A model generated the notes under the pieces. That model was not told the origin of the DNA. It did not search any database and saw only the letters and a program-made list of their open reading frames with translations. This document shows, piece after piece, positions 16,994-63,350 of a DNA stretch of 64,000 nt (within the stretch, counting starts at the first letter, position 1; every line of letters starts with the position of its first letter). The translations under genes were made by a program, and so were the position numbers. The stretch is taken from IMG/VR virus record IMGVR_UViG_3300028654_000001, positions 372,001 through 436,000 of that record. One strand, written 5' to 3'.

Positions 16994-17278
16994 TTAACCC
17001 ACCTTTTCTTTACGTTCGACCACACTTGTAGATATAACTAACACACTAAGTAACCCTAATACTAGGCACAAGTAGGCCAAGTAAGATGTACCTTCGACAA
17101 CATTACCTACTCGTCTTCTGACAATCGAGGGTGTACCCCCGAGCGAAGGTGTGGTACCCCCGACCCCGAATGTACCCCCGACCCCGGCTGCACCTGCATC
17201 CATAACTGTGGTTAACGAGAGGAAACCGAAAACCAAGAGCAGTACAAGTATGGCTAGTTTAAATCGTTTCATTATCAA
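16994..17278 (-). CDS. Small membrane protein (two hydrophobic segments, GGT-rich loop)
   Basis: LAILVLLLVFGFLSL and YLAYLCLVLGLLSVLVI segments. Confidence 0.6.
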   Translation of the reverse strand: MIMKRFKLAILVLLLVFGFLSLTTVMDAGAAGVGGTFGVGGTTPSLGGTPSIVRRRVGNVVEGTSYLAYLCLVLGLLSVLVISTSVVERKEKVG

Positions 17279-28109: not shown

Positions 28110-30416
28110 TCAGGTCTTCTTATAACAGCCGTTCAACGTCAGCCGTGTGGTCTTTGAAATAGTCTCAATCCCAAACTTATGACGAAGTTTCCTAATGGCT
28201 ACTTTAGATACGCTATAAAGTTTAGCGATCTGGTCATCACTATTGCGAAGGTATAGGTCTGAAAGAACATCCTTGGTCAACGAATCAAAAGAAAGGCTCC
28301 CAGAGGCCTTGGCACTTCTCTGGGTAAAGCTAATTGTTTGGATCCCCCACCGCTTTCGCTGCTGAGAGATCAAAACATCCGAAGTCCCGAATCTCTTACC
28401 GATCTCAGCATCAGTCATTAATTGGGCCTCGTACAACTCTCTCAAAGCGGCCTCAGTCAACCCAGATACCTTGGTATCACAGGTCTCTTTCTTATTGGGC
28501 TCTTTTGGTAGTTGGTAACAAGGAACCAAACACGTCCCCCCACCCTTCAGAAAGACTAAAATAGGTTCCATTCTATGATGACTACCGAAAGAGCCAAGCT
28601 TCATCTCAAGAGTACCCTCATACTCAAACCCGCACAGCTCGGCCATTCTAATTGACTCACTAACCAAAGGCAGTTGGGATCCATCAACTTGGATATCAGC
28701 CACATTAAGTAGCAGTCTTCCACCTGGGGCCAGACTGTTGAAGGACTTAGCTAGTAGTACAGAGAGAAATCTACTCAACCATAGATCCCAAGTTGGGTAA
28801 CGAACCCAACTCTGAGATGGATCATTGGAGTACCGCTCAACAGAAAAGTACGGAGGGCTAGTGAGAACCAAGTCAGCCTGAATATCACCTAGGTCTACCT
28901 CCTCAATTGGTTGATTGAAGAAAGTTAGGTTGACTCCTAGTAAATCCTGCAACTTTTGAAAAGACTCCCCAGCCTTCGGGTGAGGATCAACCCCAATATA
29001 TCGACGACCTGCTGCCAAAGCTCCGACAGCCCTACCCCCATATCCAGCACAGGGATCCAACACTAAACCACCAACTGAGGAGAAGTCCTCTACCAACCTC
29101 TTAGCAATAGCTGGTCTAAAGTTGGAAGGGGTTCGTACTATAGCTCGAAGTGCTCGAAATACATTCATTGGATACAGAGGGTCCCCAACTTTCAATTGGA
29201 AGTCTACAGCTCTTCGAATCAAGGCGGGGTCAAACCAAGCCCTAGTAAGAGATGGATTCTGTCCGTTGGTCGCTTCAAATCTATGTGGGAAGGCGGCCTG
29301 ACATACTGCTAACCCTACTCGACCACCCCCCTCAATCACCCCGTCACTTACTTTCGCCAAGGTTCTATGGCGTAGATTAGTGAAGTCCCTAACAACCTCA
29401 TCGTCAGAAGGCGGCTCTGGTAGCTTGAGTGAGGTTAGCAACTCAATCAAGGGTTCACCTTGCAACCCAGAATCTACGATACCTTTTGCTTCTTCCCAGG
29501 TAGGAATATACTTCGAGGTGTCTATTACAAAACCTGAACTTTTAACCGATCTTCGTACGGTATCGACCGAAGACCCTGTTGCCTGAGAAATCCACTCTAA
29601 GGATCGACCTTGCTCAACATAGTCACCAAGTTGATCCCTTAGTAAGTCAGCCGAAGATAGACCCCTAGCCCTGGGCACTAGTTCCAACTTATAGCCCATT
29701 GAAGGGGGGATATGAGGGGCTACCAAGTCCAAGAACCTGGTAAGGCTCTCACGATCGTGCAGCCATATATCAGCATCGTTAGTCTTGTAGAGTACAGGTA
29801 CGAGCCCAAACCGTTTCAGGAGTTCGAGTTGAACTTGTTGATCCTCGGGCCTTGGTGAAACAGAAAACCTAACATACCCGTTGGAGGTTTTTGAGCCATC
29901 ATCCAAGAACCAAATGGCCAAAGAGAAGGCATCAAACTCCGCAAGATCTATGTTGGAGAAGGACTTGTTCCCAGAACCATCAGGGTAGGCTTGCTTCCAA
30001 TAGGGGTATAAGTCCCTGGAACTATGCAGAGTCAGGCGAGATCCTGTATAGGTAACCCCATTCTTCACCGTCTTAGCTGGTTTGACTGAGCAAAGATGAT
30101 CGCCCCAAAGGGCGGCTTTCCAAGAGATGTAGTCATGCTGTTGGTCCGAGTGGTATTCACAGAGGCTTGCTGTGCAATCACTGCGAGAGGTGAGCCCAGC
30201 ATCTCCGAGTAGAGAGCCCAAGAGGAGAGTCTTCTGTAGTTGGGTCAGGGGCGGCAACTTCAAACGATCCGACTTTTGAATAGTCTGGATCTGGTACTTC
30301 ATTCTTCGTAGACTCACCTGCCTCTGACTCAACCCATACAACAAACCAATCTTGATCTCGGATAACCCATCATCCAGGTAAAGCCTGCGAAGTTCGGCTT
30401 CAGTGACGTCTGCCAT
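28110..30416 (-). CDS. LAGLIDADG endonuclease - amino DNA methyltransferase fusion with HTH repeats
   Basis: LLLGSLLGDAGL and LAIWFLDDG (LAGLIDADG); SNFRPAIAK, VLDPCAGYGG (motif I) and LTSPPYF (motif IV); HTH at the N-terminus and two at the C-terminus. Confidence 0.85.
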   Translation of the reverse strand: MADVTEAELRRLYLDDGLSEIKIGLLYGLSQRQVSLRRMKYQIQTIQKSDRLKLPPLTQLQKTLLLGSLLGDAGLTSRSDCTASLCEYHSDQQHDYISWKAALWGDHLCSVKPAKTVKNGVTYTGSRLTLHSSRDLYPYWKQAYPDGSGNKSFSNIDLAEFDAFSLAIWFLDDGSKTSNGYVRFSVSPRPEDQQVQLELLKRFGLVPVLYKTNDADIWLHDRESLTRFLDLVAPHIPPSMGYKLELVPRARGLSSADLLRDQLGDYVEQGRSLEWISQATGSSVDTVRRSVKSSGFVIDTSKYIPTWEEAKGIVDSGLQGEPLIELLTSLKLPEPPSDDEVVRDFTNLRHRTLAKVSDGVIEGGGRVGLAVCQAAFPHRFEATNGQNPSLTRAWFDPALIRRAVDFQLKVGDPLYPMNVFRALRAIVRTPSNFRPAIAKRLVEDFSSVGGLVLDPCAGYGGRAVGALAAGRRYIGVDPHPKAGESFQKLQDLLGVNLTFFNQPIEEVDLGDIQADLVLTSPPYFSVERYSNDPSQSWVRYPTWDLWLSRFLSVLLAKSFNSLAPGGRLLLNVADIQVDGSQLPLVSESIRMAELCGFEYEGTLEMKLGSFGSHHRMEPILVFLKGGGTCLVPCYQLPKEPNKKETCDTKVSGLTEAALRELYEAQLMTDAEIGKRFGTSDVLISQQRKRWGIQTISFTQRSAKASGSLSFDSLTKDVLSDLYLRNSDDQIAKLYSVSKVAIRKLRHKFGIETISKTTRLTLNGCYKKT

Positions 30417-51685: not shown

Positions 51686-52309
51686 TTAGGTGATTGCATC
51701 CCCACCACGGTTACTCCACTGTGGAAGCGATACCGCTCTTAAGATGTTGAAATTTTTAGAGGCTATAGAGGTGAACACCTTAGCGTACGGTATAAAGCGC
51801 TCGTCTTCTTGAGATTTCTTTTCTAAAGCCCTCACTGCTCCAAAGAAGCGATGCCTAACACGACCTTGAGTTAGGTTGAGCCTGGAAGCGACCTCACTCT
51901 GGCACGTTGTCTCCCACATACCCAACATAATGTCTACGTCTATTGGCTTGAGTGGCACTTCCAACAGACTCTTCCTCATCTCTGTTTCTTCGAGCTGAGG
52001 CATAGACGTTAGAAACTTGATCCTTTGAATCCCCCTATCCAATCTGTAGCTGATAGCCGCTTGGGTAACTCCAAAGTAATGAGCAATACTGGCCTGCCTC
52101 ATCTTATCCTTGAAGTACATCTGAATCAAGTCAGCTTCTCTATCAGGGATCTTAGGGAATAATGGTTCTATCTCGTTCTCGTAACTCATCGAAGCAAGGT
52201 CAGAGTCTGCAGGATCGTCTGGATTCTCCATCTCATAGAAGGGGGATGGATCTGGAAATCGATTGGCTATTTCATAGGGGTCTACCGAAATCAGATAACC
52301 TGTGCTCAT
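51686..52309 (-). CDS. Sigma-70 region-4-like tandem HTH protein (transcription regulator or degenerate sigma factor)
   Basis: IPDREADLIQMYF..QASIAHYFGVTQAAISYRL and QSEVASRLNLTQGRVRHRF. Confidence 0.75.
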   Translation of the reverse strand: MSTGYLISVDPYEIANRFPDPSPFYEMENPDDPADSDLASMSYENEIEPLFPKIPDREADLIQMYFKDKMRQASIAHYFGVTQAAISYRLDRGIQRIKFLTSMPQLEETEMRKSLLEVPLKPIDVDIMLGMWETTCQSEVASRLNLTQGRVRHRFFGAVRALEKKSQEDERFIPYAKVFTSIASKNFNILRAVSLPQWSNRGGDAIT

Positions 52310-52322
52310 AGATCAAACTCCG

Positions 52323-54194
52323 TCAGCCAGTTTTGGAGAATCCTGGACCGTGTTGTGGGAAGAAAGAACCCATAATTGACTCAGGTTGGATTGAGCACTC
52401 TCTTAGTGAGTTAATAGCCGCGTCGTAATCAGCAGACGCCTCAGTGATTGGACATTCAACATCCTCACATAGAGCCATCAACTTTAGATTCAAACGAGCT
52501 TGCGTCTCAAAAGCACGGATCTTATCATACTGGGCGGTAGTGATACCTGCCAGATTTGAAGAGTATACGCCGTCTAGTGATTCGTAGTTATTCAAGAGTG
52601 ATGCAATCACTTTCCGGGGTATCCTAGCTACTCCGGGCAGGTTGTCTGAGTCATCGCCGATGAATGCTCGCAAGTGGATCATCTTACGAGGAGCGACCCC
52701 ATACTCTAGCACAACCTTGTCAGGGTCGTACAGGGTCTCTGGTCTAGATCCTACCTTGGGAACCAAAACTAAGTCTGTGTATGTGACCAACTGTAAGAAA
52801 TCTCTGTCTGTGGAAACTACGAAGTTGTGAGCTCCTTTCATTTTTACTTTTACTAGGTGAGCTATTAGATCGTCTGTTTCCTCATCGGGGTTATACGCTT
52901 GATTAACCCCAAACGAAGGCAACATACTTCGAAGTCGAAGCATCTCTTCGTGAACCCCTTCAGTGTGAGGCTCCCTAGTTGCCTTGTAATCAGGATAGTC
53001 CTTAACCCTACGTTGCCGAGACCCATCCCACACAACATAGATGTTTGCCTGACTGAAACGTTTTTTGAGAGCAGCAACACTTCGAAGGAATCCAAAAATG
53101 ATTGAGGTTGGACGCCCCTCACTGTCTATAAGTGATCCACCCTGAACGAACCTCAAAGCCTTTTCGGACCTGTAGGCTAGGTTATGCCCGTCGAAAATTA
53201 GATTCTGTACCATACTAGGTTCCCAATCCGGAATAGAACGCTCAATAACCTCAACAGATTCCTGAATCTTATGCAGTCGATCGAAAACAGTCTGAAGGTA
53301 TGCTAGCTGTAGCTCTTTATTATCGAGAGGAGTCATATCCTCTCGCTCGGTAGTGATCCTATACTTGTGAAATATACCCTTGCCCCTATCAAGGAAAGAG
53401 CAGATCTGCTGGTACTTCTGGTATTTTTCTGACAGTGACACCCCGTTCTCATCTATAATTCTATCAGAGGGGGAGGCCGAATCAGTTACAAGTCTAAGAA
53501 GTCGCCTGCCGCTAGAACACCACTTGTCTAACTGCACTATATTACTGAACTTAGTGGAAACTGTATTGATATTTGGGGTCCTACACTCTACGATGGGTGT
53601 AACTTTTCGTGTCCAATCTCTGATTCTGGTAACCTTCGTAATGAAGGGGGAGTGAAAGTACTGCTCATCATCTCCACTTCTTGGAATGTACCTCAATGAG
53701 GTACGCGGTAGAGTCAGCAAGGACTTCTTAGATCTGAGGTTTATGAATACCTGAACGCTACCTGTCTCAGGTATATCCTCAATGACGCGCCCCCTGAGGT
53801 TCTTGTATGGCTCGCTCATGATTACCACATCATCCCCAACCTCGATACCCTGCTCGGTCTCGATGTGGATCTGACGTCTCATCCGATCGATATCCTTGTC
53901 ATAGACACAAGCTAATCTACGAGATATACTGCTAGTAACCGTTAAAACAGAGGATATATATCGAGTACCCTCCATCTTGAGAAACTCAGCATCAGTTAGG
54001 TCACGCCTAACGAACACATAATTGTCAATCAGCTTGTGAACAACACGGGATCCACCAGGAACCTTTACTACCGAAGCGGGGATGAAGAACTCCTTACCCT
54101 TAACCATTCGATTAAGGGACTTATGAAGAACATCAGGGTCTTCATCCTCACCTTGAGGGTTTAGCTCTAGTACTACCCATTCAGTTGTTGCCAC
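52323..54194 (-). CDS. NusG/RfaH (NGN+KOW) - 5'-3' exonuclease (FEN/Pol I N-domain) fusion
   Basis: N-part: WVVL..FIP..LIDNYVFV..YISSVL..GDDVVIMSEPYKNLRG. C-part: IFDGHNLAYR..VWDG..YKATR..ETDDLI..STDRDFLQL..GDDSDNLPGV. Likely GTG start at 54194. Confidence 0.85.
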   Translation of the reverse strand: MATTEWVVLELNPQGEDEDPDVLHKSLNRMVKGKEFFIPASVVKVPGGSRVVHKLIDNYVFVRRDLTDAEFLKMEGTRYISSVLTVTSSISRRLACVYDKDIDRMRRQIHIETEQGIEVGDDVVIMSEPYKNLRGRVIEDIPETGSVQVFINLRSKKSLLTLPRTSLRYIPRSGDDEQYFHSPFITKVTRIRDWTRKVTPIVECRTPNINTVSTKFSNIVQLDKWCSSGRRLLRLVTDSASPSDRIIDENGVSLSEKYQKYQQICSFLDRGKGIFHKYRITTEREDMTPLDNKELQLAYLQTVFDRLHKIQESVEVIERSIPDWEPSMVQNLIFDGHNLAYRSEKALRFVQGGSLIDSEGRPTSIIFGFLRSVAALKKRFSQANIYVVWDGSRQRRVKDYPDYKATREPHTEGVHEEMLRLRSMLPSFGVNQAYNPDEETDDLIAHLVKVKMKGAHNFVVSTDRDFLQLVTYTDLVLVPKVGSRPETLYDPDKVVLEYGVAPRKMIHLRAFIGDDSDNLPGVARIPRKVIASLLNNYESLDGVYSSNLAGITTAQYDKIRAFETQARLNLKLMALCEDVECPITEASADYDAAINSLRECSIQPESIMGSFFPQHGPGFSKTG

Positions 54195-55626
54195 CAGCAC
54201 CTCTTCCAATCCAGATTCCTTCAAACTCCCTACGCCAATCGGATGGTGGGATGGGAGCTCTTCCATCCCTTGACTTAGTGTCAAAACTGATCGGTTTCTG
54301 CTTCCTACTCTGAGTAGGAAGTTCTTCAGGGATCACAGCCGTGTCATTCTCTGTAAGGGCCTGCATATCTCTTGAACCTAAGTTACCTTTCCCATCCTTC
54401 CGTAGCCCCTCCATGTCTTGTTCAATCGGAGGCGGGACTAAAGTTGTAGTTCTGATGGGTTTGGTTACTTCTACAGTAGGTTCTATAGGAGTGACATTTG
54501 GTTGTGTTTGTGGGGTAGCTGTTTGGACGAAAGTACTGACTGCGATAGTTTGGGTTACTTCTTGTTGGACTTGACGAGTAATAGGCCCTGACCTAAGTCT
54601 TTGATTCAGGGTGGTTATATCACAGATTAGTCCGATCTGTGTTGTATAGCGAGATTTGAGGAAGTGCTCTGCAATAGAAGTTAATCCAGTGCTGTACAGC
54701 TCACTGACTTTTGCGCTAAGTTCTTTGTCTGCGAATGTAAAATCAGCATTCATACCGTTAGCAAGACGAAATGAATTCATTGCAGCCTCAGCAAGACCTG
54801 AAGCTGCTTCCTCAGGGGTGATTCGCTCGCAGACAGAATCAACTAGAGATAGTGCTTGCTTGAGATTAGAGGGTATGTTGAGTAGGATCTCGTAATAAGT
54901 GCTAACTACGGAAAGGTTAAGGTGTTCCCTGACATTAGCCACCTTAACAGGACCCACCTGGGCTATCATCTCCAAGCGGTTCACCACATCTCGTACGTGA
55001 CCCCCAGAGAAGTCTATTACTATGAGTATGGCATCATCCTCATACTCGACCTTCTCCGCTTCAAGGATCCGTTTCATGCGGACAAGGATGTCTTCTCGAG
55101 TCACCCGACGTATCGAATACTCCTCGCACCTAGAGCGAATAGCACCACGAACCTTCTCAGGTTCAGTAGTGCAGAACATACCAAGCATCTTCCTCTCTTC
55201 AAGAGGTTTCAGAAGAACGTCTTGGGCATCCTTCGACATACGATGGCATTCATCGAATAGATAGATCCTCTTCGCTGCCCCCATCACCGTAAATGGTAGC
55301 TCATCGACGATCCTTCTAATTTGTTCTATGTTACCCTGACTAGCTGCATCCTGCTCCACGAAAACCATGGAAGTGTCATTCAAGATCGATAGACAACTCT
55401 CACACGTGTTACACGGTTCTGGGTTATTCTTATCCAGGTTGTGGCAGAGCATTGCCCGTGCAAAGATTCTTGCGAGAGTTGTCTTACCTTGCCCAGATCC
55501 ACCACTGAATATGTAACTAGTGTCGAGAGCGGTCCCGTTCCTCAACCTCGCTTTAAGGAGTTGAACAGTCCCGGTCTGACCTAGTACATCAGAGAAAATC
55601 AAAGGACGATGAGAGGTGTCCCACAT
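54181..55626 (-). CDS. dnaX: DNA polymerase III gamma/tau clamp-loader subunit
   Basis: HRPLIFSDVLGQ, GGSGQGKTTLARI, PCNTCESC, LFDECH, IRSRC. Confidence 0.92.
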   Translation of the reverse strand: MWDTSHRPLIFSDVLGQTGTVQLLKARLRNGTALDTSYIFSGGSGQGKTTLARIFARAMLCHNLDKNNPEPCNTCESCLSILNDTSMVFVEQDAASQGNIEQIRRIVDELPFTVMGAAKRIYLFDECHRMSKDAQDVLLKPLEERKMLGMFCTTEPEKVRGAIRSRCEEYSIRRVTREDILVRMKRILEAEKVEYEDDAILIVIDFSGGHVRDVVNRLEMIAQVGPVKVANVREHLNLSVVSTYYEILLNIPSNLKQALSLVDSVCERITPEEAASGLAEAAMNSFRLANGMNADFTFADKELSAKVSELYSTGLTSIAEHFLKSRYTTQIGLICDITTLNQRLRSGPITRQVQQEVTQTIAVSTFVQTATPQTQPNVTPIEPTVEVTKPIRTTTLVPPPIEQDMEGLRKDGKGNLGSRDMQALTENDTAVIPEELPTQSRKQKPISFDTKSRDGRAPIPPSDWRREFEGIWIGRGAGGNN

Positions 55627-55786: not shown

Positions 55787-56281
55787 TTAGTTGACTGTAG
55801 CTTGTTGGACTACTTCACTATCTTCACTATCCCCCGTCATGAAACTTAGGTCGAGCTCTTTAGCTACAGAAGCAAAGTTTGATAGATCTTCTGTCCAAGC
55901 TCCGTGCCGACGTAGGATCGAACTGAATTCGTGAACGTCTGGCTCCCTTGTAGCCCACTTCATTTCAGAGGTCTGCTCTTCTTCTTCTCCAGTGCATCGC
56001 TCAAGGAAGTGATCAACAAGAGCTGTTCTCTTGGCACCATCCATCTCATTCCAAACATCCAATGGGATTTCCAGCAAGAAGTCTGGGTGACCTTCCATGA
56101 GAAATTTCTGCTGATCACTTAGTTTCTTCACAGAGCCTAGTACTATCTTACCCCCTTTGGAGCTAGCTTTTTCCTTGAAAATATACCTGATAATGGCAGT
56201 TGCCAGTTCAGGATGGTGGGTGCCAATTAGGCTGTTAGCAAGATTCTCAACTGGTTCTGCTTCAGTATATACTTGAGCCAT
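55787..56281 (-). CDS. Putative phage metallopeptidase-like protein
   Basis: LVDHFLERC...PDVHEFSSILRRHGAW pattern. Confidence 0.65.
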   Translation of the reverse strand: MAQVYTEAEPVENLANSLIGTHHPELATAIIRYIFKEKASSKGGKIVLGSVKKLSDQQKFLMEGHPDFLLEIPLDVWNEMDGAKRTALVDHFLERCTGEEEEQTSEMKWATREPDVHEFSSILRRHGAWTEDLSNFASVAKELDLSFMTGDSEDSEVVQQATVN

Positions 56282-56283
56282 GA

Positions 56284-56985
56284 CTACTCCGAGATCTGTT
56301 CCAAAAGGTACGGGCCTAATCTGTCATCACCCCACGCTTCCCAGAGGTCGGCGGGGTCCTTAACCGGTTTGCCATTTAGGGTTACACCTCTGGGGTACTC
56401 CAAAACCCGAACTAGTTCCACTTTGGAGCCATGGTCACGCAGAAAGTCGCTACTTGCCCTAAGACCACTCGAATCAGCATCAAAGAAGATGTACAGCTTG
56501 CGGACAAGCCTGATGATCCACCGCAACAGGTCCTCCCTAACTTTAGAGGTTATTGTTGAGAAAGCAAACGGGAGAACCCTCTGAACTGGGAATAAATCAA
56601 AGACCCCTTCGACAATACATGCAGATCCTGTATCCCAAATATACTGCATACTCTGGCCGAGTCCGAAAAGAACTGGCTCTAACTCAGTCAAAAAGTAATC
56701 CGAGTACTTCTTGACGGATCTATCAACAGGTCTAAATTGAAGACCGCAGATCTCACCAGACGTATTAGTCAAAGGCAACACATAGGAGTCTTCTAGACTT
56801 TCCCCGTTCTTAAACTGCTTCAGGAATTCCTGGGGGATTTGAATGTCTGGAAGTTTCTTATCTACGTAGCCAATTTGAAACAACTCTATCTGCGGAGAAG
56901 ATACTCCTCGAGTCCATAGGGCATCCAGGACTCTTTCATCCAAGTTACCCCTAGAAAAAGAAACGAAGTCATCAACCCATTCCAT
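56284..56985 (-). CDS. DnaG-like primase (TOPRIM domain, no Zn-binding domain in this ORF)
   Basis: IVEGVFD, FDADSSG, KDPAD. Confidence 0.8.
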   Translation of the reverse strand: MEWVDDFVSFSRGNLDERVLDALWTRGVSSPQIELFQIGYVDKKLPDIQIPQEFLKQFKNGESLEDSYVLPLTNTSGEICGLQFRPVDRSVKKYSDYFLTELEPVLFGLGQSMQYIWDTGSACIVEGVFDLFPVQRVLPFAFSTITSKVREDLLRWIIRLVRKLYIFFDADSSGLRASSDFLRDHGSKVELVRVLEYPRGVTLNGKPVKDPADLWEAWGDDRLGPYLLEQISE

Positions 56986-57556
56986 CGACTTTGATCACCG
57001 TTATGTTTTGACGGACATTATAGAACTGAAGACCGAGGTAGTCTCCAATCCTTACATAAACACCTAGGTTTGGTGGAGTTGTAAATAGAAGGGCGCCACC
57101 AAGCGGTAACTTGGCTGATAACACCTGAATCCCATCAACGATTCCGACAAGACCCTCAGATGAACTCGTGGTAAACTGAGACACCAAGTTATCAGATATG
57201 ACCAGATTCTTCGGCTTACTTGAGGATGCTCTCATGAACTCGATAGCAGAGTTTGTAGTGGTGAACCGGTTATTCCAACCAGACTCTACGGACAGAACCC
57301 CCAGAGCGCTGTAAAGTCGGCCTAGAAGGATAGACTCACTCTCCAGGGGGCAACCAGAGAACCCAAATCTAGCTATACCTTCTCGGCTACGTCTTGTCGG
57401 AACAAACGAGCCTCTGGCATTTGTTACCAACAGTGGCTCAGTCTCCTGTGGTACCTCCCGCTCTGACATGAAGGGCACCGAGAACCCACCTGATGGGGCA
57501 GCCCGCTGTCGGTAACGTTCAGTAACCAGGAGGTGAGCTAAAATTGATAGGTTCAT
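56972..57556 (-). CDS. Hypothetical protein
   Basis: Likely start is ATG at 57556. Confidence 0.6.
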   Translation of the reverse strand: MNLSILAHLLVTERYRQRAAPSGGFSVPFMSEREVPQETEPLLVTNARGSFVPTRRSREGIARFGFSGCPLESESILLGRLYSALGVLSVESGWNNRFTTTNSAIEFMRASSSKPKNLVISDNLVSQFTTSSSEGLVGIVDGIQVLSAKLPLGGALLFTTPPNLGVYVRIGDYLGLQFYNVRQNITVIKVDGMG

Positions 57557-58109
57557 CTCGAAAAACCCTCTCAACCTTCTCAGGTGCTGGTAGTAACTTT
57601 TGAGCATCAATCTTCGGTAGCACCGACTCAATCTTGATCCTCAAAAACTTGAAGAGAAGTTTCTTCCACCACGGAACCCCAAGTTTGAAGTCCCCGATCA
57701 CCCAGAGCAGGGCAAACACTTCTGGTAGGTTGTCACGTACCCAATTTATACTCTGCAAATCCATCTCTAGTTCTGGGAGGATAGATTCCTTGCCCTTAGC
57801 TGGGGTGAAATAAGGGCACTTCTTGGCATCAATAGGCTCCTCACAGATGGTCCCTCCCCATTCAGATGGGTCCTCACTCTGGAGCAGACATAACCCTATC
57901 GTCTGTAAAACTGGGAGCCCTACCTTATCAGTGATACGGTTGTAGCTCTCGTTCTCCTCCCCTTCGATCTGCTTCCGTTGGTCAAGTGGGTGTCGATAGT
58001 TATTGATACAGAGGTGAGGGAGCCTCTCAGAGGCCACTGCCACACGCCGGTCGAGCTCTTTACAAACAAGGTCTCTAACAAAGTCCTCAACCTCTGATTC
58101 AGTTTTCAT
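57519..58109 (-). CDS. Hypothetical protein with Cys motifs
   Basis: 196-aa ORF coupled to its neighbours. Confidence 0.65.
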   Translation of the reverse strand: MKTESEVEDFVRDLVCKELDRRVAVASERLPHLCINNYRHPLDQRKQIEGEENESYNRITDKVGLPVLQTIGLCLLQSEDPSEWGGTICEEPIDAKKCPYFTPAKGKESILPELEMDLQSINWVRDNLPEVFALLWVIGDFKLGVPWWKKLLFKFLRIKIESVLPKIDAQKLLPAPEKVERVFRDEPINFSSPPGY

Positions 58110-58795
58110 TTGGGGCCTCGTATGCGCTTGGCAACGAAATGGTTCCTACCAGACTCTTGTCTAGTTTCACACTGGTAGGCACTCACAGAGTGATCAAGGT
58201 AGGCAAGTTTGTGAGTCACCATCATAATTTGAATGCCAGTTGTTTCAGCAAGGCTCTTAAGGAATTGACCTGTATTCTCAATGTAGTCATCCGAAACAGC
58301 ATTTAGGGTCTCATCCAGTAATAGGATCTTGCCTTTATTAAGGCGTATTAGAGTCAGCAACCGTAAGATCAGGCTAGCTATACTCGAGGGTCCCCCACCA
58401 AATGAATCCAAAGGGGAGCCTTTGACCCCACCGTTATCTGGGTCACCAGAACAGATGAAGAACTCTGCACTGACCTTGTTGTACTTCGAGGATAGTTCAG
58501 CTTTGAAGCTCAAGTCCTGATCATAAAAGATGGTGCGAAGACCTTCGGTTATCACCTGTTCAATGAGCTGTACTTGCCCCATGATCATATGATCCATGAG
58601 AACTCTGAACAGCTCGGACACCTTTGTTAGAACTTCTTGACGCAAGGAGAGGGCAATTAGGTCCCTCTCCTTTGCTTCAAGATCCGTAACCAACTGGTCT
58701 CGAAGAGTACCCAGTTTTGTGGCCTTGTTACGGAGACTTTGGATTCTATGACTACGGGTCACTCCCTCGACGGCATGAACCTGGTCACTCTGCAT
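58106..58795 (-). CDS. sbcC: SbcC/Rad50-like ABC ATPase, C-terminal half only
   Basis: Short coiled coil, signature-like SFGGG, Walker B LLLDE and H-loop MVTH; no Walker A. Confidence 0.8.
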   Translation of the reverse strand: MQSDQVHAVEGVTRSHRIQSLRNKATKLGTLRDQLVTDLEAKERDLIALSLRQEVLTKVSELFRVLMDHMIMGQVQLIEQVITEGLRTIFYDQDLSFKAELSSKYNKVSAEFFICSGDPDNGGVKGSPLDSFGGGPSSIASLILRLLTLIRLNKGKILLLDETLNAVSDDYIENTGQFLKSLAETTGIQIMMVTHKLAYLDHSVSAYQCETRQESGRNHFVAKRIRGPK

Positions 58796-60000
58796 GGAAT
58801 GGATCCTTCTGGTTCCGGGGTAACCTTACCGGTTTTCGCATCGAGTCTGAATTCATCGATTGTCCTGAAAAGACCAACCTCATTTTTACGAGTGGCAGTA
58901 GGGGGGGATATAACCCATCGTATCTCTGCATCGTGTCCCTTGATGGTCTGAACTAACTCGATGAAGAAGTCTACGTTGACTCCGATCGTATAAGCCTGTG
59001 GTTCAACAGCTTCCTCTTCAGATTCGTTGAACTTGTACTTGACATTGACAGCAATCGTCCGAGTCTTTGACTCTGGAAAGGAAAATCTCATCTCCTTCGA
59101 GTTAGGATTGAAGTTGATTTTGACTCGATTCTTGTCCTTAGCCATGCACGCACGGGCATGTTGAAGTGCATTAAGAAGGGCAGCTCTATTAGCAGTAACC
59201 GCTATTGGGTCCTTCTTAGTCGTATAGTAATTGAACTTGTCGTGAAACTTCTCGTGCTCAGGCCACCCGAATACACTATCCTTATCGTTGACAGCAAATG
59301 TGTAGTGTTTACCCTTACAGATAGTGACTTCACCATCGCACTTTGACAAGAAACTTAGGAAGGATGAAGCATGCTGCCCGTGGATCTCTAGACTCTTACC
59401 CTTAAACTCATCGGTATAGAAGTAGAATGCTCGATTACCGTCGGCCGCGTACAGATAACCATCACCGTTCGGGAGTCGATTCTTATCAATAACCTCAATA
59501 CCTTTCAAGTTTTCAGTTTTACTGTCCTTCAAGTCAGCAGTAAATGGTCTTGCTAGGCTGATTGCCTCGCGAAGGATACTCGAAGAAAATATATACTTGG
59601 TTTGAGCCGATTCAAAGTCAGTATCACAAGTTGCCAACAACCCGGGATCAAAAGATCCAAACTCAGACTCAGCACCGCCTGGTGTATGATACTCAACTGT
59701 GTAGCGACCCTCATCAGACGTAGCTTCGATGTCACAAGTACCCTCTGCGAGGAGGTACTTCAATGCTCCTATATACTCAGATGGGAATGCAAATGACCCA
59801 TCCCCTTCTGTCTCTAGAAGAGAGAACTTAGCTCTGGAAACACATTGAGTGTTACGGGAGTACAAGAAACACTCCAAGCCCCGAACTACGAAGAGGTAGC
59901 CTGCACCCCCGCTTTGGGTTACTCCGCTTGGGTTTACAATAGAAACTACCTCAAGAGCCTCACTCAGGTCTTGCAGGTTGAATTTGATCTTGGTCTTCAT
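58759..60000 (-). CDS. dnaN: DNA polymerase sliding clamp (beta-clamp-like)
   Basis: 413 aa with three repeated domains (L.EAL..V, ILREAISLA, LLNAL..A), LYAADG and VNVDFF; neighbours dnaX. Confidence 0.7.
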   Translation of the reverse strand: MKTKIKFNLQDLSEALEVVSIVNPSGVTQSGGAGYLFVVRGLECFLYSRNTQCVSRAKFSLLETEGDGSFAFPSEYIGALKYLLAEGTCDIEATSDEGRYTVEYHTPGGAESEFGSFDPGLLATCDTDFESAQTKYIFSSSILREAISLARPFTADLKDSKTENLKGIEVIDKNRLPNGDGYLYAADGNRAFYFYTDEFKGKSLEIHGQHASSFLSFLSKCDGEVTICKGKHYTFAVNDKDSVFGWPEHEKFHDKFNYYTTKKDPIAVTANRAALLNALQHARACMAKDKNRVKINFNPNSKEMRFSFPESKTRTIAVNVKYKFNESEEEAVEPQAYTIGVNVDFFIELVQTIKGHDAEIRWVISPPTATRKNEVGLFRTIDEFRLDAKTGKVTPEPEGSIPCRVTRFMPSRE

Positions 60001-60291: not shown

Positions 60292-61257
60292 CTAATCATC
60301 AGACCCAAGGGTTAACTCTGTTACACCTTCCGGAAGGTTTAAGCGGGCCCTTCGACGATACTTTTGAATCTCCTTCTGTCCATCTTCACAAAGTGGTACA
60401 AAAGGGCACAGAGTGCAGTTATGACTTGGTTGAGCAGGAAACAATTCCTGCCGGAGCTCATCATGAGATTGCGGGGTATCCTCAATAGATTCCAACTTAC
60501 GAACTGACTGGTCAATCCTGGCCAACACTGAAAGAACCTCAGTTTGTAAGTTATCGAGGTCTTTCTCTGAAAATGGAATCCATTCTATGGCCTCTTCACC
60601 GCTAAACCTCCAGAATATGTAGCCTAGCTTATCGGGAATGATCTTACGTTTGGCACGGTATAATACCGCGTACCACTTCAGTTGGACCCCCTCAGCCTTC
60701 TCACCCTTCTTCAGCGGCTGACCATCAACGTATTTGTCCCGATGCTTTGACCCCTTACCGTCAAGAATCACCAAGTCGTTGTATGGAGGAACCCTCTGAA
60801 TGACAAAGTCTGATCTACCACCCATAATATAAGAACCAAACTTAGAGTCAAGTTTGAGTTCTGGCTCCATTCGCGGCCCAACAAGCCTATTATGGCGAAT
60901 TGTTTGGAGACCTACAGGGATTGTAGCATACAAGTCATTTAGAATCTCATCTTTGCTGTGGTAGTTGGCCTTCTCATCTGGCCAGTCAATGATACGACCC
61001 TTCTTAGTGGTATCCGCTATAGCAGCATCGAGATGAGGTTGAGCAAGATTTTGCAGTTTACCAGCACAATCGGAGTCTCTCCACAATCTATCTCGGTAGA
61101 ATGACTCAAAGAGTGTGCCTATTGCTGAACCATATAGAGCATTGATCCCATTCTCCGGCTCTGGTGGAGTAGCTTTCACCACATATTTATTCCAGTATGA
61201 GTATGGGCATTTCCTCTCCGTACTGAAACCAGAGTAGGATATATAATTGATGCTCAT
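60292..61257 (-). CDS. PD-(D/E)XK (RecB/Cas4-like) nuclease
   Basis: KCPYSYW, GRSDFV..ILDGKGS, QLKWY, CTLCPFVPLC. Confidence 0.85.
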   Translation of the reverse strand: MSINYISYSGFSTERKCPYSYWNKYVVKATPPEPENGINALYGSAIGTLFESFYRDRLWRDSDCAGKLQNLAQPHLDAAIADTTKKGRIIDWPDEKANYHSKDEILNDLYATIPVGLQTIRHNRLVGPRMEPELKLDSKFGSYIMGGRSDFVIQRVPPYNDLVILDGKGSKHRDKYVDGQPLKKGEKAEGVQLKWYAVLYRAKRKIIPDKLGYIFWRFSGEEAIEWIPFSEKDLDNLQTEVLSVLARIDQSVRKLESIEDTPQSHDELRQELFPAQPSHNCTLCPFVPLCEDGQKEIQKYRRRARLNLPEGVTELTLGSDD

Positions 61258-63350
61258 CCGACCTCAGCTTGCTCTAGATACTTCATGGCCTCACTACGAA
61301 CATCATCAGCAAAGTCCAATGATGCTATGCTAGACTCGATGGATGCATTGGGATCCATTGCCAAGTCAGTCACGAGTCTAGTCACAAATTGATCTATATC
61401 GTGGTGCTCACGTTCTTGAAGGGCTTTCTTATCCAGGTCAAAAACATCGGCAGCAGGGGCCACAATCAACTTGGAAATGCTTACCTTGATAGTCTGACCA
61501 TCAAACTCGAGAAGGGATACTTGCGGGGTTCTCTCAAGATTCTCTCGTACCAAGGCCCCCCTAGAGACAGCCCCTTGATTGACAAAATACTTCCCACCAA
61601 TCTCCTCTATACCTTGATCTTTATGCCAATGTCCAAAGCAATTATGAACAAGAATACCTCCTGCAAGATACTCACCAGTGGAGGTTCTGAAGTTATGAAC
61701 TAGCCCTTTGTAGGGGGTTCTAGATACACTGCGAACTCGAACATAATACAACCCGTCAGAAAAGAAACCAGCTACTTTAGTCTTTGATCGATCTGGGGGT
61801 ATGATACCCATTCTATTTGACAGGGACTCTCCATCATCTCCATAGAACGAGATAACTTGACAAGGATGGTATCCATCTTTTTGTGGAGGTCTAACTGTGA
61901 AGTAAGGTCGGAGTCCAATAGACAGAGCTAGAAAGAAAATCTGAAATCCAAGAGTAATTGATACAGTAGCCCCCATTACTTCAGTTCTAGTTTTTCGTGC
62001 GTGACCATCCCCAAGCAGCCAGCCAACTAAGAACTCTAAGCGATCTATAGCTGATCTATTCCAGATCCAAGACGATAGACTCTTCTGATCAGAAAAACGC
62101 CCACTGTGTTCGAGGAAGAAATCAGAAACTTCTTTTCCATAAGCGCATACTTGAACACAAGACCCACTAGTCTTATGGGTATGAGTTTCAAGACCAAAGT
62201 GTTCACTCACTAATAGACGAACATCCTCATGTAGGTCTACTTCATCCTCATGAAAACTCCAAGCCACTCCAGCTACAGGAACCTTTTCTCTATTCTCTAT
62301 GATGTGCCCCTCTGCTGCGTAGTAACCCAAAAGCCTAGCTAACCCTGAGTATGAAGCTGAATCATTCGGAATCTGTGGAACAGGAATTGCCAGATAATCA
62401 CCAATACTAACACTTCCCGCTCTAACCCAAGAAGCTCTAACCTCAGGAGCATTAGGACATACCGAACATGGGTATGAAGAGACTGGCTTATCAGGATGAC
62501 ACCTACGTGTAGATCGAGAGGGTACTAAACACCGCATACCCGTAGCAACCCAGTAAGGGTGTTCAGAGGTTACCCCTAAGACTACAGGTGGGACTCCTTC
62601 CACATCAAAAGATATAAGATCTTCGTCTACCAATCTAGAAGGGTGGACACACTCAACACTATTACTTGGGTCTCTTCCAACAACAATAGTACCCCCCACA
62701 ACCTTCTCAATCAATATAGGCCGATACAGAGAATCTAATACGGGGGTACCTGATGGAAAGCACCACACATCGGGACCATTACGGCTCACGAGGGACTCGT
62801 AAGAGAAAACAGGCTCGTTCCAGAAGTCCTCAACAGCAGAGGGTGGAGTCTTGCAGGCTAGGGCGTGCACAATAGCAACAAGATGAGTGTCACCCTTCTG
62901 CTTCTGGATGCTCAGGAGATCAGCCAAAGAGCGGGTTGAACTGTATGGAACCCCAACCACTCGAACCCGAAGGTCCCCATCCTCAAAGACTTGCTCCCGG
63001 AGAAGCTTAAAGGCGTCACTCGCATAGATCACCCCCAGAGGCTGCTTGGCTAAGCTCTCCAAGTTGTTGTATGCTAAGTCATGATTACCCTCAACTCCGA
63101 AGGTTGGGCACCGGTAACCTCTATGGATTCGTATTGTTCTTTCAACAAGGTGATGCGGATTCTTAGAGGAAGCCTTGACGTGAAAGTAGTCTCCTCCATC
63201 AAGAACTGCATTCACCTCATACTTGGCTGCCAGACCACCGATCTGCTCTAGGTTAGAGAATATCTCTGCTGTATAATCCCCCTTCCACGAAATTGGGCTG
63301 TGAGCTGCCAAGTGAGTGTCTGTTCTGAACAAGAATGAGATCCTAGGCAT
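61254..63350 (-). CDS. sbcD: SbcD/Mre11 metallophosphoesterase containing a cis intein
   Basis: DTH, GGDYF and GNHD; GHWH is restored after intein removal. Confidence 0.9.
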   Translation of the reverse strand: MPRISFLFRTDTHLAAHSPISWKGDYTAEIFSNLEQIGGLAAKYEVNAVLDGGDYFHVKASSKNPHHLVERTIRIHRGYRCPTFGVEGNHDLAYNNLESLAKQPLGVIYASDAFKLLREQVFEDGDLRVRVVGVPYSSTRSLADLLSIQKQKGDTHLVAIVHALACKTPPSAVEDFWNEPVFSYESLVSRNGPDVWCFPSGTPVLDSLYRPILIEKVVGGTIVVGRDPSNSVECVHPSRLVDEDLISFDVEGVPPVVLGVTSEHPYWVATGMRCLVPSRSTRRCHPDKPVSSYPCSVCPNAPEVRASWVRAGSVSIGDYLAIPVPQIPNDSASYSGLARLLGYYAAEGHIIENREKVPVAGVAWSFHEDEVDLHEDVRLLVSEHFGLETHTHKTSGSCVQVCAYGKEVSDFFLEHSGRFSDQKSLSSWIWNRSAIDRLEFLVGWLLGDGHARKTRTEVMGATVSITLGFQIFFLALSIGLRPYFTVRPPQKDGYHPCQVISFYGDDGESLSNRMGIIPPDRSKTKVAGFFSDGLYYVRVRSVSRTPYKGLVHNFRTSTGEYLAGGILVHNCFGHWHKDQGIEEIGGKYFVNQGAVSRGALVRENLERTPQVSLLEFDGQTIKVSISKLIVAPAADVFDLDKKALQEREHHDIDQFVTRLVTDLAMDPNASIESSIASLDFADDVRSEAMKYLEQAEVG
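61641..62762 (-). mobile_element. 374-aa intein with LAGLIDADG homing endonuclease
   Basis: CFPSGTPV (block A), VTSEHPY (block B), LLGYYAAEG and WLLGDG (LAGLIDADG), VHNF..GILVHN|C (blocks F/G). Confidence 0.92.

What the first reader, a model, noticed from the sequence alone, without database searches (positions are those of the whole stretch)
52323..54194. NusG fused in frame to a 5'-3' exonuclease
A full NGN+KOW module is linked by about 180 helical residues to a complete FEN/Pol I-type 5' nuclease with its acidic active-site motifs intact. A transcription elongation factor tethered to a 5'-3' nuclease suggests coupling of RNAP to nucleic-acid degradation: torpedo-like termination (as with Spt5-recruited Rat1/Xrn2 or archaeal FttA), R-loop or primer removal at transcription-replication conflicts, or host shut-off. 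An internal Met just before the nuclease (PSMVQNLIFDG) could also yield a stand-alone enzyme.
Basis: partly seen in the sequence, partly recalled or inferred. Interest (0 to 1): 0.75.

Follow-up and report, generated by a model that had tools for sequence, protein, structure and literature searches.

The report
NusG-like factor fused to flap nuclease
A 512-kb soil phage, like dozens of related giant phages, joins a NusG-type RNA-polymerase-binding module to its only flap nuclease in one protein, hinting at an undescribed physical link between transcription and DNA replication.

Summary
The gene lies on the minus strand (52323-54194, 623 aa). It has four parts: NGN (4-98), KOW (117-170), a poorly conserved four-helix spacer (173-327) and a Pol I-type 5' nuclease (331-600) with every catalytic residue invariant.

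The window comes from a 512,571-bp phage genome with terminal repeats. No RNA polymerase was detected in it, but it encodes several sigma factors. This is its only NusG-like module and its only FEN.

The fusion is real and conserved:
- 63 of 75 related viral loci carry it as one ORF.
- All 75 loci share the order clamp ... primase-like - metallopeptidase - clamp loader - [NusG/FEN] - sigma-region-4 protein.
- Basal relatives encode NusG-like and FEN as adjacent separate genes, or NusG-like alone.
- The fusion arose apparently once and re-split twice, at or within a few codons of Met328.

Met328's column holds a start-capable codon in 40 of 50 distinct fused genes, so a free FEN isoform is plausible.

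RNAP binding and mechanism are inferred, not shown. My best reading is an RNAP-tethered replicative flap nuclease acting where transcription meets replication. Torpedo termination is unlikely. I found no description of it in the literature; only JGI's automatic annotation names both domains.

The parts
52323..54194 (-). Whole NusG-like/FEN fusion gene, 623 aa plus stop codon (52323-52325). The GTG start overlaps the clamp-loader stop by 14 nt.
53901..54185 (-). NGN domain (residues 4-98). Motifs EWVVLEL..GE and L55-x3-Y59-x-F61 align with NusG WYVV..GxE and LFPGYVFV.
53685..53846 (-). KOW domain (residues 117-170). GDxV..GPY motif. The invariant LRSK hairpin replaces NusG IFGR.
53214..53678 (-). 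Helical spacer (residues 173-327). Four long helices, variable in length (137-190 aa) and weakly conserved. Absent from basal relatives whose genes are separate.
53211..53213 (-). Internal ATG (Met328), candidate start of a stand-alone FEN isoform. One natural re-split lies exactly here and the other a few codons upstream.
52698..53201 (-). FEN N-terminal PIN-like nuclease domain (residues 332-499) with invariant metal-binding acids and the YKAxR arch motif.
52431..52697 (-). FEN H3TH / SAM-fold DNA-binding domain (residues 500-588), with the GDxSDNxPGV motif.
52326..52430 (-). C-terminal tail (residues 589-623) with the conserved [IL][ILM]xxFF motif and, in close relatives, GFxK. Candidate clamp-binding peptide; untested.
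   Evidence: one search gave no answer
54181..55626 (-). Upstream operon partner: DnaX-like clamp-loader ATPase.
51686..52309 (-). Downstream operon partner: protein with sigma-70 region 4 (SigF/FliA-like) plus a second HTH, and no region 2. It starts 13 nt after the fusion's stop codon.
55787..60000 (-). Rest of the conserved replisome block: phage metallopeptidase (55787-56281), Toprim/primase-like (56284-56985), three unknown ORFs, and a beta-type sliding clamp (58759-60000).

Best explanation
SHOWN.
- The gene encodes one 623-aa polypeptide. It comprises a NusG-family NGN+KOW module, a helical spacer of about 155 aa, and a catalytically intact Pol I-type 5' flap nuclease.
- It is the only NusG-like module and the only recognisable FEN in the genome. 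No RNase HI or XPG-type FEN was found either.
- The genome is a 512-kb phage. It uses a family-A polymerase with no 5'-nuclease domain of its own, has no detectable RNA polymerase, and encodes several sigma factors.
- The gene sits in a conserved replisome operon, between the clamp loader and a sigma-region-4 protein.
- The fusion arose from adjacent genes, apparently once, and has been kept across a large clade of 230-530-kb phages.

INFERRED.
- The NGN domain docks on the beta' clamp helices and beta gate loop of the host RNAP that the phage's sigma factors redirect, as all characterised NGN domains do.
- The spacer holds the FEN near the upstream DNA of the elongation complex.
- The FEN keeps its replicative job of removing Okazaki-primer RNA and 5' flaps.
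- As the tethered form, it also clears RNA:DNA hybrids and flaps made where RNAP and the replisome share the template. These would be R-loops, and transcripts used as primers after co-directional collisions. Such events should be frequent in a genome with about 240 kb of genes on one strand.
- A second product, free FEN started at Met328, is probably also made and would serve ordinary lagging-strand maturation.
For: Domain identity.

Sole FEN and sole NusG in the genome. The same holds for FEN in 12 near-complete relatives: 12 of 12 have exactly one PF02739 hit and 0 of 12 have RNAP beta.

No RNAP but three sigma region-2 loci.

Family-A polymerase lacking a 5' nuclease.

Operon order conserved in all 75 viral loci and in assemblies at 39-53% identity.

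Link to transcription:
- The neighbouring gene is always a sigma-region-4 protein.
- One relative fuses a full sigma factor (r2+r4) to the same NGN-KOW family.

Adjacent-gene ancestry, an apparently single fusion and two fissions.

Internal start: ATG 33, GTG 6 and TTG 1 of 50; no Ile or CTN-Leu at that column. Upstream anti-SD pairing averages -4.8 vs -3.0 kcal/mol at random sites, p 1.4e-6.

One-strand gene array.

That all NGN domains contact the clamp helices and gate loop is stated in PMC7819879.
Against: - No direct or predicted evidence that this NGN binds any RNAP. The host is unknown.
- The Pro of the NusG FPGY motif is not kept, and the KOW hairpin differs (LRSK vs IFGR), so its partners may differ from NusG's.
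- The covalent link is dispensable in evolution. Basal relatives have separate genes, three loci have NusG-like without an adjacent FEN, and two lineages re-split.
- Other lineages carry a winged-helix-like extension in place of the FEN.
- The spacer is poorly conserved and matches no known fold.
- The anti-SD statistic is not corrected for relatedness, and the window's own upstream motif is weak (-4.6 kcal/mol).
- A tethered FEN sits near the 3' end of the transcript, not the 5' end it would have to thread.
Confidence: 0.4

Rival explanations
1. Co-expression fusion without mechanical coupling. The NusG-like part is a phage elongation/antitermination factor for very long operons, and the FEN is simply the replicative primer-removal nuclease. 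Two neighbouring, translationally coupled genes merged, and the link only fixes stoichiometry or timing.
For: - Separate adjacent genes in basal relatives and two re-splits in the fused clade.
- Three loci have NusG-like with no adjacent FEN (L013).
- The spacer is weakly conserved.
- A conserved internal start would free the FEN anyway.
- Long one-strand gene arrays favour a processivity factor.
Against: - The fusion is retained in 63 of 75 loci, across NGN-KOW identities down to about 30%.
- A helical spacer of about 140-190 aa appeared with the fusion and is always kept, which plain stop-codon loss does not predict.
- In the re-split lineages the spacer stays on the NusG half, suggesting it has a role.
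Confidence: 0.25
2. Replication-coupled transcription, by analogy with T4 late transcription. The NGN occupies the beta' clamp helices (the gp55/sigma-2 site). The neighbouring sigma-region-4 protein occupies the beta flap (the gp33/sigma-4 site). The FEN with its C-terminal tail anchors the complex to the sliding clamp or to nicks and flaps in replicating DNA, so that RNAP is recruited to or activated on replicating phage genomes.
For: - The gene trio clamp loader - NusG-like - sigma-4 protein is invariant, with the clamp nearby.
- The FEN has a conserved C-terminal hydrophobic tail: [IL][ILM]xxFF in fused forms and DWLxxI in most separate forms.
- The sigma-4 protein has an extremely conserved C-terminus.
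- A sigma/NGN-KOW fusion exists in a relative.
- The T4 mechanism itself is from established knowledge, not tested here.
Against: - The clamp/tail co-fold gave no answer (score 0.00), which is neither support nor evidence against.
- The nuclease active site is fully conserved, which a mere anchor would not need.
- The phage also has ordinary sigma factors with region 2.
- NusG-only relatives keep the trio without a FEN.
Confidence: 0.15
3. The NGN-KOW module no longer binds RNAP. It has been re-used as a replisome adaptor (for example binding the clamp loader, primase or SSB), so the protein is purely a replication enzyme.
For: - The gene is translationally coupled to the clamp loader in every locus.
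- The KOW hairpin and part of the FPGY motif diverge from NusG.
- The family profile finds only 408 proteins among 1.84 billion and not bulk bacterial NusG, so it is a divergent branch.
Against: - The invariant neighbour is a sigma-region-4 protein, and one relative fuses this module to a sigma factor.
- The core NGN motifs (WVV..GE, L-x3-Y-x-F) are invariant.
- No NGN domain with a non-RNAP partner site is known (PMC7819879).
Confidence: 0.1
4. Torpedo-like termination or host shut-off. The RNAP-borne nuclease degrades nascent RNA 5'-3' to dislodge RNAP, or destroys host nucleic acids.
For: - XRN enzymes share the PIN-like/FEN-like catalytic fold.
- Spt5/NusG-family factors recruit termination nucleases in eukaryotes and archaea. 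Foldseek also matched Spt5 in an FttA pre-termination complex, 9bct.
Against: - The domain is a standard Pol I-type FEN with an H3TH duplex-binding module. Its best matches are FenA, ExoIX, Taq and T5 FEN, which are junction-specific enzymes, not processive ssRNA exonucleases.
- It is the sole FEN in 13 of 13 genomes checked, so replication needs it.
- It sits in the replisome operon, not an early host-takeover region.
Confidence: 0.05

Closest known systems
Bacterial NusG and its specialised paralogues (RfaH, LoaP, UpxY)
   Same: - Two-domain NGN+KOW layout, fold and core motifs.
- Weak sequence hits to all of these families.
- The best structural matches are NusG and RfaH bound to RNAP.
- A mobile-element-encoded, lineage-specific paralogue, as the specialised ones are.
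   Different: - Carries a C-terminal extension of about 450 aa (spacer + nuclease).
- The FPGY Pro is lost, and the KOW hairpin reads LRSK instead of IFGR.
- Encoded in a replisome operon.
- Pfam NusG score is borderline.
- RNAP binding, any recruitment signal, and Rho or S10 contacts are all unknown.
Pol I-type 5' nucleases / stand-alone FENs (M. smegmatis FenA, E. coli ExoIX/Xni, B. subtilis YpcP, Taq 5' domain, T5 D15, T4 RNase H)
   Same: - PIN-like domain plus H3TH domain, all metal-binding acids and the arch Lys/Arg.
- The sole FEN of a phage with its own replisome, like T5 D15 or T4 RNase H.
   Different: - Joined to neither a polymerase nor nothing, but to a transcription-factor module through a helical spacer.
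- Has its own conserved C-terminal FF tail.
T4 late-transcription machinery (gp45 clamp, gp44/62 loader, gp55, gp33)
   Same: Genes for a clamp, a clamp loader, a clamp-helix-site binder and a flap-site-type protein are clustered, and short conserved C-terminal tails are present. This would be an analogous logic of coupling transcription to replication.
   Different: - No homology to gp55 or gp33.
- A clamp interaction is not shown (one search gave no answer).
- An active nuclease is part of the protein.
Spt5-linked termination nucleases (Rat1/Xrn2 in eukaryotes, FttA in archaea)
   Same: The concept of a NusG/Spt5-family factor bringing a nuclease to RNAP.
   Different: - Those interactions are non-covalent, and the nucleases act on single-stranded nascent RNA.
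- Here the link is covalent, and the nuclease is a DNA-junction FEN needed for replication.

Membership tests
NusG/Spt5 family | NGN domain fold (alpha/beta) with core motifs | tested here: met
   Foldseek on the AF2 model of 1-327 returns only NusG/RfaH/Spt5 in the top 30, E to 3e-9. The profile hits 2lq8 at E 2e-7 to 4e-7. W6, G15/E16, L55, Y59 and F61 are invariant or nearly so.
NusG/Spt5 family | C-terminal KOW beta-barrel with the KOW motif | tested here: met
   PF00467 is recorded for many homologues. The profile hits the NusG KOW structure 1nz9 at E 1.6e-4. Model strands 122-170.
NusG/Spt5 family | Pfam NusG (PF02357) gathering score | tested here: inconclusive
   20.8 bits against a 22.2 cut-off for the protein, but 24.7 bits, over the cut-off, for the six-frame ORF. 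Some homologues carry PF02357.
NusG/Spt5 family | Binding to the RNAP clamp helices and gate loop | not testable with these tools
Inferred only from fold, motifs, the sigma neighbour and the sigma fusion.
NusG/Spt5 family | KOW contact residues for Rho/S10 (IFGR hairpin in bacterial NusG; role recalled from the literature) | tested here: not met
   The aligned hairpin is an invariant LRSK (R154, S155, K156). The Phe position is Arg. This argues against housekeeping-NusG behaviour, not against family membership.
Pol I-type 5'-3' exonuclease / FEN (PF02739+PF01367) | PIN-like N-domain and H3TH domain above curated thresholds | tested here: met
   98.2 bits (cut-off 34.3) and 56.1 bits (cut-off 40). 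Foldseek matches FenA at E 1.9e-17, TM 0.78 by target.
Pol I-type 5'-3' exonuclease / FEN (PF02739+PF01367) | Two clusters of metal-binding carboxylates, and arch Tyr/Lys/Arg | tested here: met
   D335, E438, E439, D441, D463, D465, D514, D517, Y403 and R407 are invariant. D390, D442 and K404 are conserved in at least 90% of 39 sequences.
Pol I-type 5'-3' exonuclease / FEN (PF02739+PF01367) | Structure-specific 5' nuclease activity | not testable with these tools
   Needs an enzyme assay.
T4-type clamp-coupled transcription factors | C-terminal peptide that binds the sliding clamp | tested here: inconclusive
   A conserved FF tail exists. The co-fold with the phage clamp dimer scored 0.00 and was reported as no answer.

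The most novel reading that the evidence does not exclude
The NusG-like/FEN protein, the adjacent sigma-region-4 protein and the phage sliding clamp would form a physical bridge between host RNA polymerase and the phage replisome. In this reading the NusG-type factor works as a replication-coupled transcription device or an RNAP-borne R-loop/primer nuclease, with a second, free FEN isoform made from a conserved internal start. This would be a new way for a virus to coordinate transcription and replication on a half-megabase genome.
Probability: 0.25. Interest if true: 0.85.

Novelty: new variant of a known kind. Interest (0 to 1): 0.66.

Why it matters
NusG/Spt5 is the only transcription factor family conserved in all domains of life. 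In the literature I could search, its known partners are Rho, the ribosome and processing factors, none of them covalently attached enzymes.

Here a whole clade of giant phages has attached the family's RNAP-docking module to the replication flap nuclease and placed it in the replisome operon next to a sigma-like protein. If the tether works as inferred, it gives a directly testable handle on how transcription-replication conflicts, R-loops or replication-coupled gene expression are managed on very large viral genomes.

The variants found alongside it show the NGN-KOW module being used as a portable platform. They are: NusG-like alone, NusG-like with winged-helix-like repeats, NusG-like with FEN, and sigma factor with NusG-like.

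The probable two-product gene (full-length protein plus free FEN) would be another example of an internal start yielding two proteins from one gene.

Tried and rejected
- Clamp binding. Co-folding the phage clamp dimer with the fusion's last 64 residues scored 0.00, and the tool says this is no evidence either way.
- Spacer identity. Foldseek on the 1-327 model gave only NusG-module hits. The protein-atlas feature search of 176-328 scored no higher than 0.61, below noise. The profile against PDB gave only coiled-coil-like noise. I found no known fold.
- Literature.
- GenBank phages. No record covers 80% or more of the protein. The 484-kb uncultured phage LR756508 has only a stand-alone FEN without this module.
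- Apparent split gene in L011. Rejected as a true split: it is a 1-nt shortfall in a T-run, probably an assembly error.
- Internal promoter or terminator. The consensus scan gave no more sites than shuffled sequence.
- Alternative genetic code. Rejected: the standard code gives 81% coverage by long ORFs.
- Phage-encoded RNAP as the NGN target. No Rpb2_6 or Rpb1_2 match was found. The T7-type search also found nothing, but its control was silent, so that absence is weak. Very divergent RNAPs could still escape Pfam.
Full report
WHAT IS THERE

The finding's coordinates hold a single open reading frame on the minus strand, window 52323-54194. It is 623 aa long and starts at a GTG preceded by GAAGAGG. 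The public collection holds the identical 623-aa gene call (P0001).

Pfam places a 5'-3' exonuclease N-domain at residues 332-499 (E 5.5e-28) and its H3TH/SAM-fold domain at 500-588 (E 5.4e-15). It gives a NusG NGN match at 6-106 that falls just below the gathering score (20.8 vs 22.2 bits). NCBIfam gives weak, concordant hits to nusG, RfaH, UpxY and LoaP over residues 27-167.

The weak N-terminal signal becomes solid with family information:
- A profile of 39 full-length homologues hits the NusG structure 2lq8 at E 2e-7 across both domains.
- An AlphaFold2 model of residues 1-327 (mean pLDDT 82) retrieves only NusG, RfaH and Spt5 chains as its 30 best PDB matches. E-values reach 3e-9 over about 176 aligned columns.
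- The family motif L55-I-D-N-Y59-V-F61-V aligns with NusG LFPGYVFV.
- The KOW segment GDDVVIMSEPY aligns with GDMVKIISGPF.

The full-length model (pLDDT 82, pTM 0.53) shows NGN strands and helices at 5-98, a helix at 99-114 and a KOW barrel at 122-170. Four long helices follow between 183 and 320, and then the nuclease. Foldseek matches the nuclease to M. smegmatis FenA (E 1.9e-17), E. coli ExoIX, the Taq 5' domain and T5 FEN.

Across homologues down to 37% identity, the metal-binding acids and the arch motif are invariant or nearly so. These are D335, D390, E438, E439, D441, D442, D463, D465, D514 and D517, plus Y403-K404-x-x-R407. The spacer keeps only W194 and R306.

The strand is minus. 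The spacer is about 155 residues rather than 180. The internal Met is residue 328 (ATG at 53211-53213).

WHERE IT IS

The window is bases 372001-436000 of a 512,571-bp virus record with direct terminal repeats. GC content is 49% and the genetic code is standard. It comes from rhizosphere metagenomes.

Contig pieces from three further samples cover most of the gene, including the spacer/nuclease junction, with no differences and no indels.

The genome's relevant content is as follows:
- No match to the RNAP beta or beta' catalytic domains. The T7-type RNAP search also found nothing, but its control was silent, so that absence is weak.
- Three sigma-70 region-2 loci.
- A family-A DNA polymerase in a 1422-aa ORF.
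- A second clamp-loader subunit.
- No DnaE, no RNase HI and no XPG-type FEN.
- Exactly one NusG-like match and one PF02739 match, both in this gene.

So the phage probably depends on host RNAP redirected by its own sigma factors. Its polymerase lacks a 5' nuclease domain, and this protein is its only recognisable primer- and flap-removing enzyme.

In the window, the gene overlaps the stop codon of a DnaX-like clamp-loader gene by 14 nt. A gene for a protein with sigma-70 region 4 starts 13 nt after its stop codon. Further upstream lie a phage metallopeptidase, a Toprim/primase-like gene and a beta-type clamp.

IS THE FUSION CONSERVED?

Yes. The word-indexed search lists 120 homologues down to 37% identity, nearly all covering 92-100% of the query, on contigs up to 473 kb. 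JGI's automatic name for them is '5'-3' exonuclease/transcription antitermination factor NusG'.

An exhaustive profile search with the N-terminal half finds 408 proteins (E <= 1e-3) among 1.84 billion cluster representatives. This is a small, divergent branch, not bulk bacterial NusG.

A scan of IMG/VR returned 75 loci, many on contigs of 230-530 kb. I annotated them with HMMs built from this family and its neighbours. All 75 share the order clamp ... Toprim - metallopeptidase - clamp loader - [NusG-like ...] - sigma-4 protein.

The slot between the clamp loader and the sigma-4 gene is filled in three ways:
- 63 loci have a single fused ORF.
- 9 loci have NusG-like and FEN as adjacent separate ORFs.
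- 3 loci, plus L013 from an assembly, have a 171-190-aa NusG-like gene and no FEN before the sigma-4 gene.

Relatives at 39-53% identity from other assemblies show the same synteny.

A maximum-likelihood tree of the NGN-KOW module separates three groups:
- A clade with separate genes and no spacer (L079-L084).
- A NusG-only clade.
- A fused clade of 51 rows (support 97/76).

Two fissions are nested inside the fused clade. In L062, the NusG+spacer ORF ends and the FEN ORF starts in an ATGA overlap exactly at the conserved Met. L031 and L032, from different samples, share a two-ORF layout in which the FEN has its own ATG.

One apparent split (L011) is a one-base shortfall in a T-run and is probably an assembly error.

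The simplest history is adjacent genes, then one fusion that brought in the spacer, then rare re-splitting. The tree's root is a midpoint, so the polarity is inferred.

In 12 near-complete relatives (393-529 kb), none has RNAP beta, and each has exactly one FEN, the one in this operon.

THE INTERNAL START

At the column of Met328, the 50 distinct fused genes that could be scored carry ATG 33 times, GTG 6 times and TTG once. Neither Ile nor CTN-Leu ever occurs there. The subclade that lacks a start-capable codon at that column has a Met four to eight codons upstream.

Predicted pairing to the anti-Shine-Dalgarno sequence upstream of this site is stronger than at random in-gene positions. The means are -4.8 and -3.0 kcal/mol (Mann-Whitney p 1.4e-6). 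This test is not corrected for relatedness, and the window's own site is modest at -4.6 kcal/mol.

Together with the natural fissions at or within a few codons of this site, this makes an internally initiated free FEN plausible. It is not shown. The consensus promoter and terminator scan shows nothing beyond chance inside the gene.

LINKS TO TRANSCRIPTION

The invariant downstream neighbour has a region-4 domain most like SigF/FliA (E 1e-7 to 8jzt). It has a second invariant HTH, no region 2, and a strikingly conserved C-terminus, FNILREVKLPQWxxRGGD.

One relative (P0178, 541 aa) fuses a complete sigma factor (regions 2 and 4) to the same NGN-KOW family.

Other lineages keep the same operon slot but extend NGN-KOW with one or two repeats of a winged-helix-like motif instead of spacer+FEN.

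These architectures tie the module to RNAP and DNA. They show it serving as a platform that carries different DNA-directed additions.

According to the NusG review PMC7819879, all NGN domains studied contact the beta' clamp helices and the beta gate loop.

Against a housekeeping-NusG role, the KOW hairpin that reads IFGR in bacterial NusG is an invariant LRSK here. My recollection is that the Phe of that hairpin is needed for Rho and S10 contacts. That point rests on memory, not on a test.

HOW IT MOST LIKELY WORKS

Shown: the domain identities, the intact active site, the sole-FEN status, the operon context and the evolutionary history.

Inferred:
- The NGN docks on host RNAP.
- The spacer places an active flap nuclease near the upstream DNA of elongation complexes.
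- The enzyme removes RNA primers and flaps during replication.
- In its tethered form it clears RNA:DNA hybrids, or transcript-derived primers, where RNAP and the replisome meet.

About 240 kb of this genome is transcribed from one strand. A processivity factor and a way to deal with co-directional encounters would therefore both be useful. I put this composite reading at about 0.4.

The rivals are:
- A fusion of convenience without mechanical coupling (0.25). The repeated separations favour it. The ever-present spacer and the long retention of the fusion count against it.
- A T4-like, clamp-coupled transcription device (0.15). The clamp loader/NusG/sigma-4 trio and the conserved C-terminal tails suggest it, but the only test I could run, a co-fold of the tail with the clamp dimer, gave no answer.
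- An NGN-KOW re-used as a replisome adaptor (0.1).
These fit poorly with a junction-specific Pol I-type FEN that replication probably needs.

COMPARISON AND NOVELTY

The two halves are clear members of known families: NusG/Spt5 by fold and motifs, and Pol I-type FEN by every sequence criterion. The combination, its spacer and its replisome-operon setting are not described in any paper I could find. They are also absent from deposited phage genomes. Only an automatic annotation string records the two domains.

I classify it as a new variant of a known kind, of moderately high interest. The protein is common in uncultivated giant phages, its function is experimentally approachable, and it bears on how transcription and replication are coordinated.

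Nothing here called for a referred step.

Noticed in passing
window 51686-52309 (-): A protein with a SigF/FliA-like sigma region 4 plus a second invariant HTH and no region 2. Its C-terminus, FNILREVKLPQWxxRGGD, is almost unchanged across all 75 related loci. Its function is unknown. It could bind the RNAP flap or act as a partner of the NusG-like protein.
   Followed up: partly
L012:3612-5237: A 541-aa protein (P0178) on an 18-kb viral-like contig fuses a full sigma factor (Sigma70_r2 + r4) to the same phage NGN-KOW family. Sigma region 2 and NGN use the same RNAP site, so this may be a built-in initiation-to-elongation hand-over.
   Followed up: partly
L094:5001-6221 and L095:5001-6188: In the same operon slot, other lineages extend NGN-KOW with 150-230 aa and no FEN. 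Several of these proteins (P0196, P0250, P0212, P0224, P0229) carry one or two repeats of a winged-helix-like motif (GRxxLYRRVxYAFRNQR...G.W.LT..G).
   Followed up: partly
L037:5195-8002, L059:5263-7989, L064:5221-7959; L011:2405-5008: In some relatives the clamp-loader gene carries an insertion of about 430 aa between its first 50 residues and the rest, which looks intein-like. In L011 a LAGLIDADG gene interrupts it.
   Followed up: no
window 28110-30416 (-) and 61254-63350 (-): Two more genes with LAGLIDADG endonuclease domains inside enzymes: an N6/N4 DNA methylase and a calcineurin-like phosphoesterase. Homing elements or inteins appear common in this genome.
   Followed up: no
window 12456-16217 (+): A 1253-aa protein with four family-2 glycosyltransferase domains. 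It is one of the few plus-strand genes in the window.
   Followed up: no
window 17275-19560 (-): A 761-aa protein with six collagen triple-helix repeat stretches plus EPTP/DUF6242 beta-propeller-like matches. It may be a fibre or host-recognition protein.
   Followed up: no
G000:C1:296443-298908 (L091, L092), outside the window: The family-A DNA polymerase lies in a 1422-aa ORF, and its Pfam match is split into two pieces about 1.2 kb apart. This suggests a large insertion, possibly an intein. It has no 5' nuclease domain.
   Followed up: no
whole genome, about 240-480 kb (window included): Nearly all long ORFs over about 240 kb lie on the minus strand, with matching negative GC skew. This is a very long one-directional gene array.
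   Followed up: partly
window 52326-52430 (-); L079-L083 FEN C-termini: The FEN ends in a short conserved hydrophobic tail: [IL][ILM]xxFF, plus GFxK in close relatives of the fused forms, and DWLxxI-COOH in most of the separate-gene forms. This resembles clamp-binding peptides. The co-fold test gave no answer.
   Followed up: partly
L032:3660-3700: In the re-split lineage, the switch between the NusG+spacer frame and the FEN frame lies next to a run of seven A's just before the FEN ATG. I did not examine whether ribosomal frameshifting could still yield some fused protein there.
   Followed up: no
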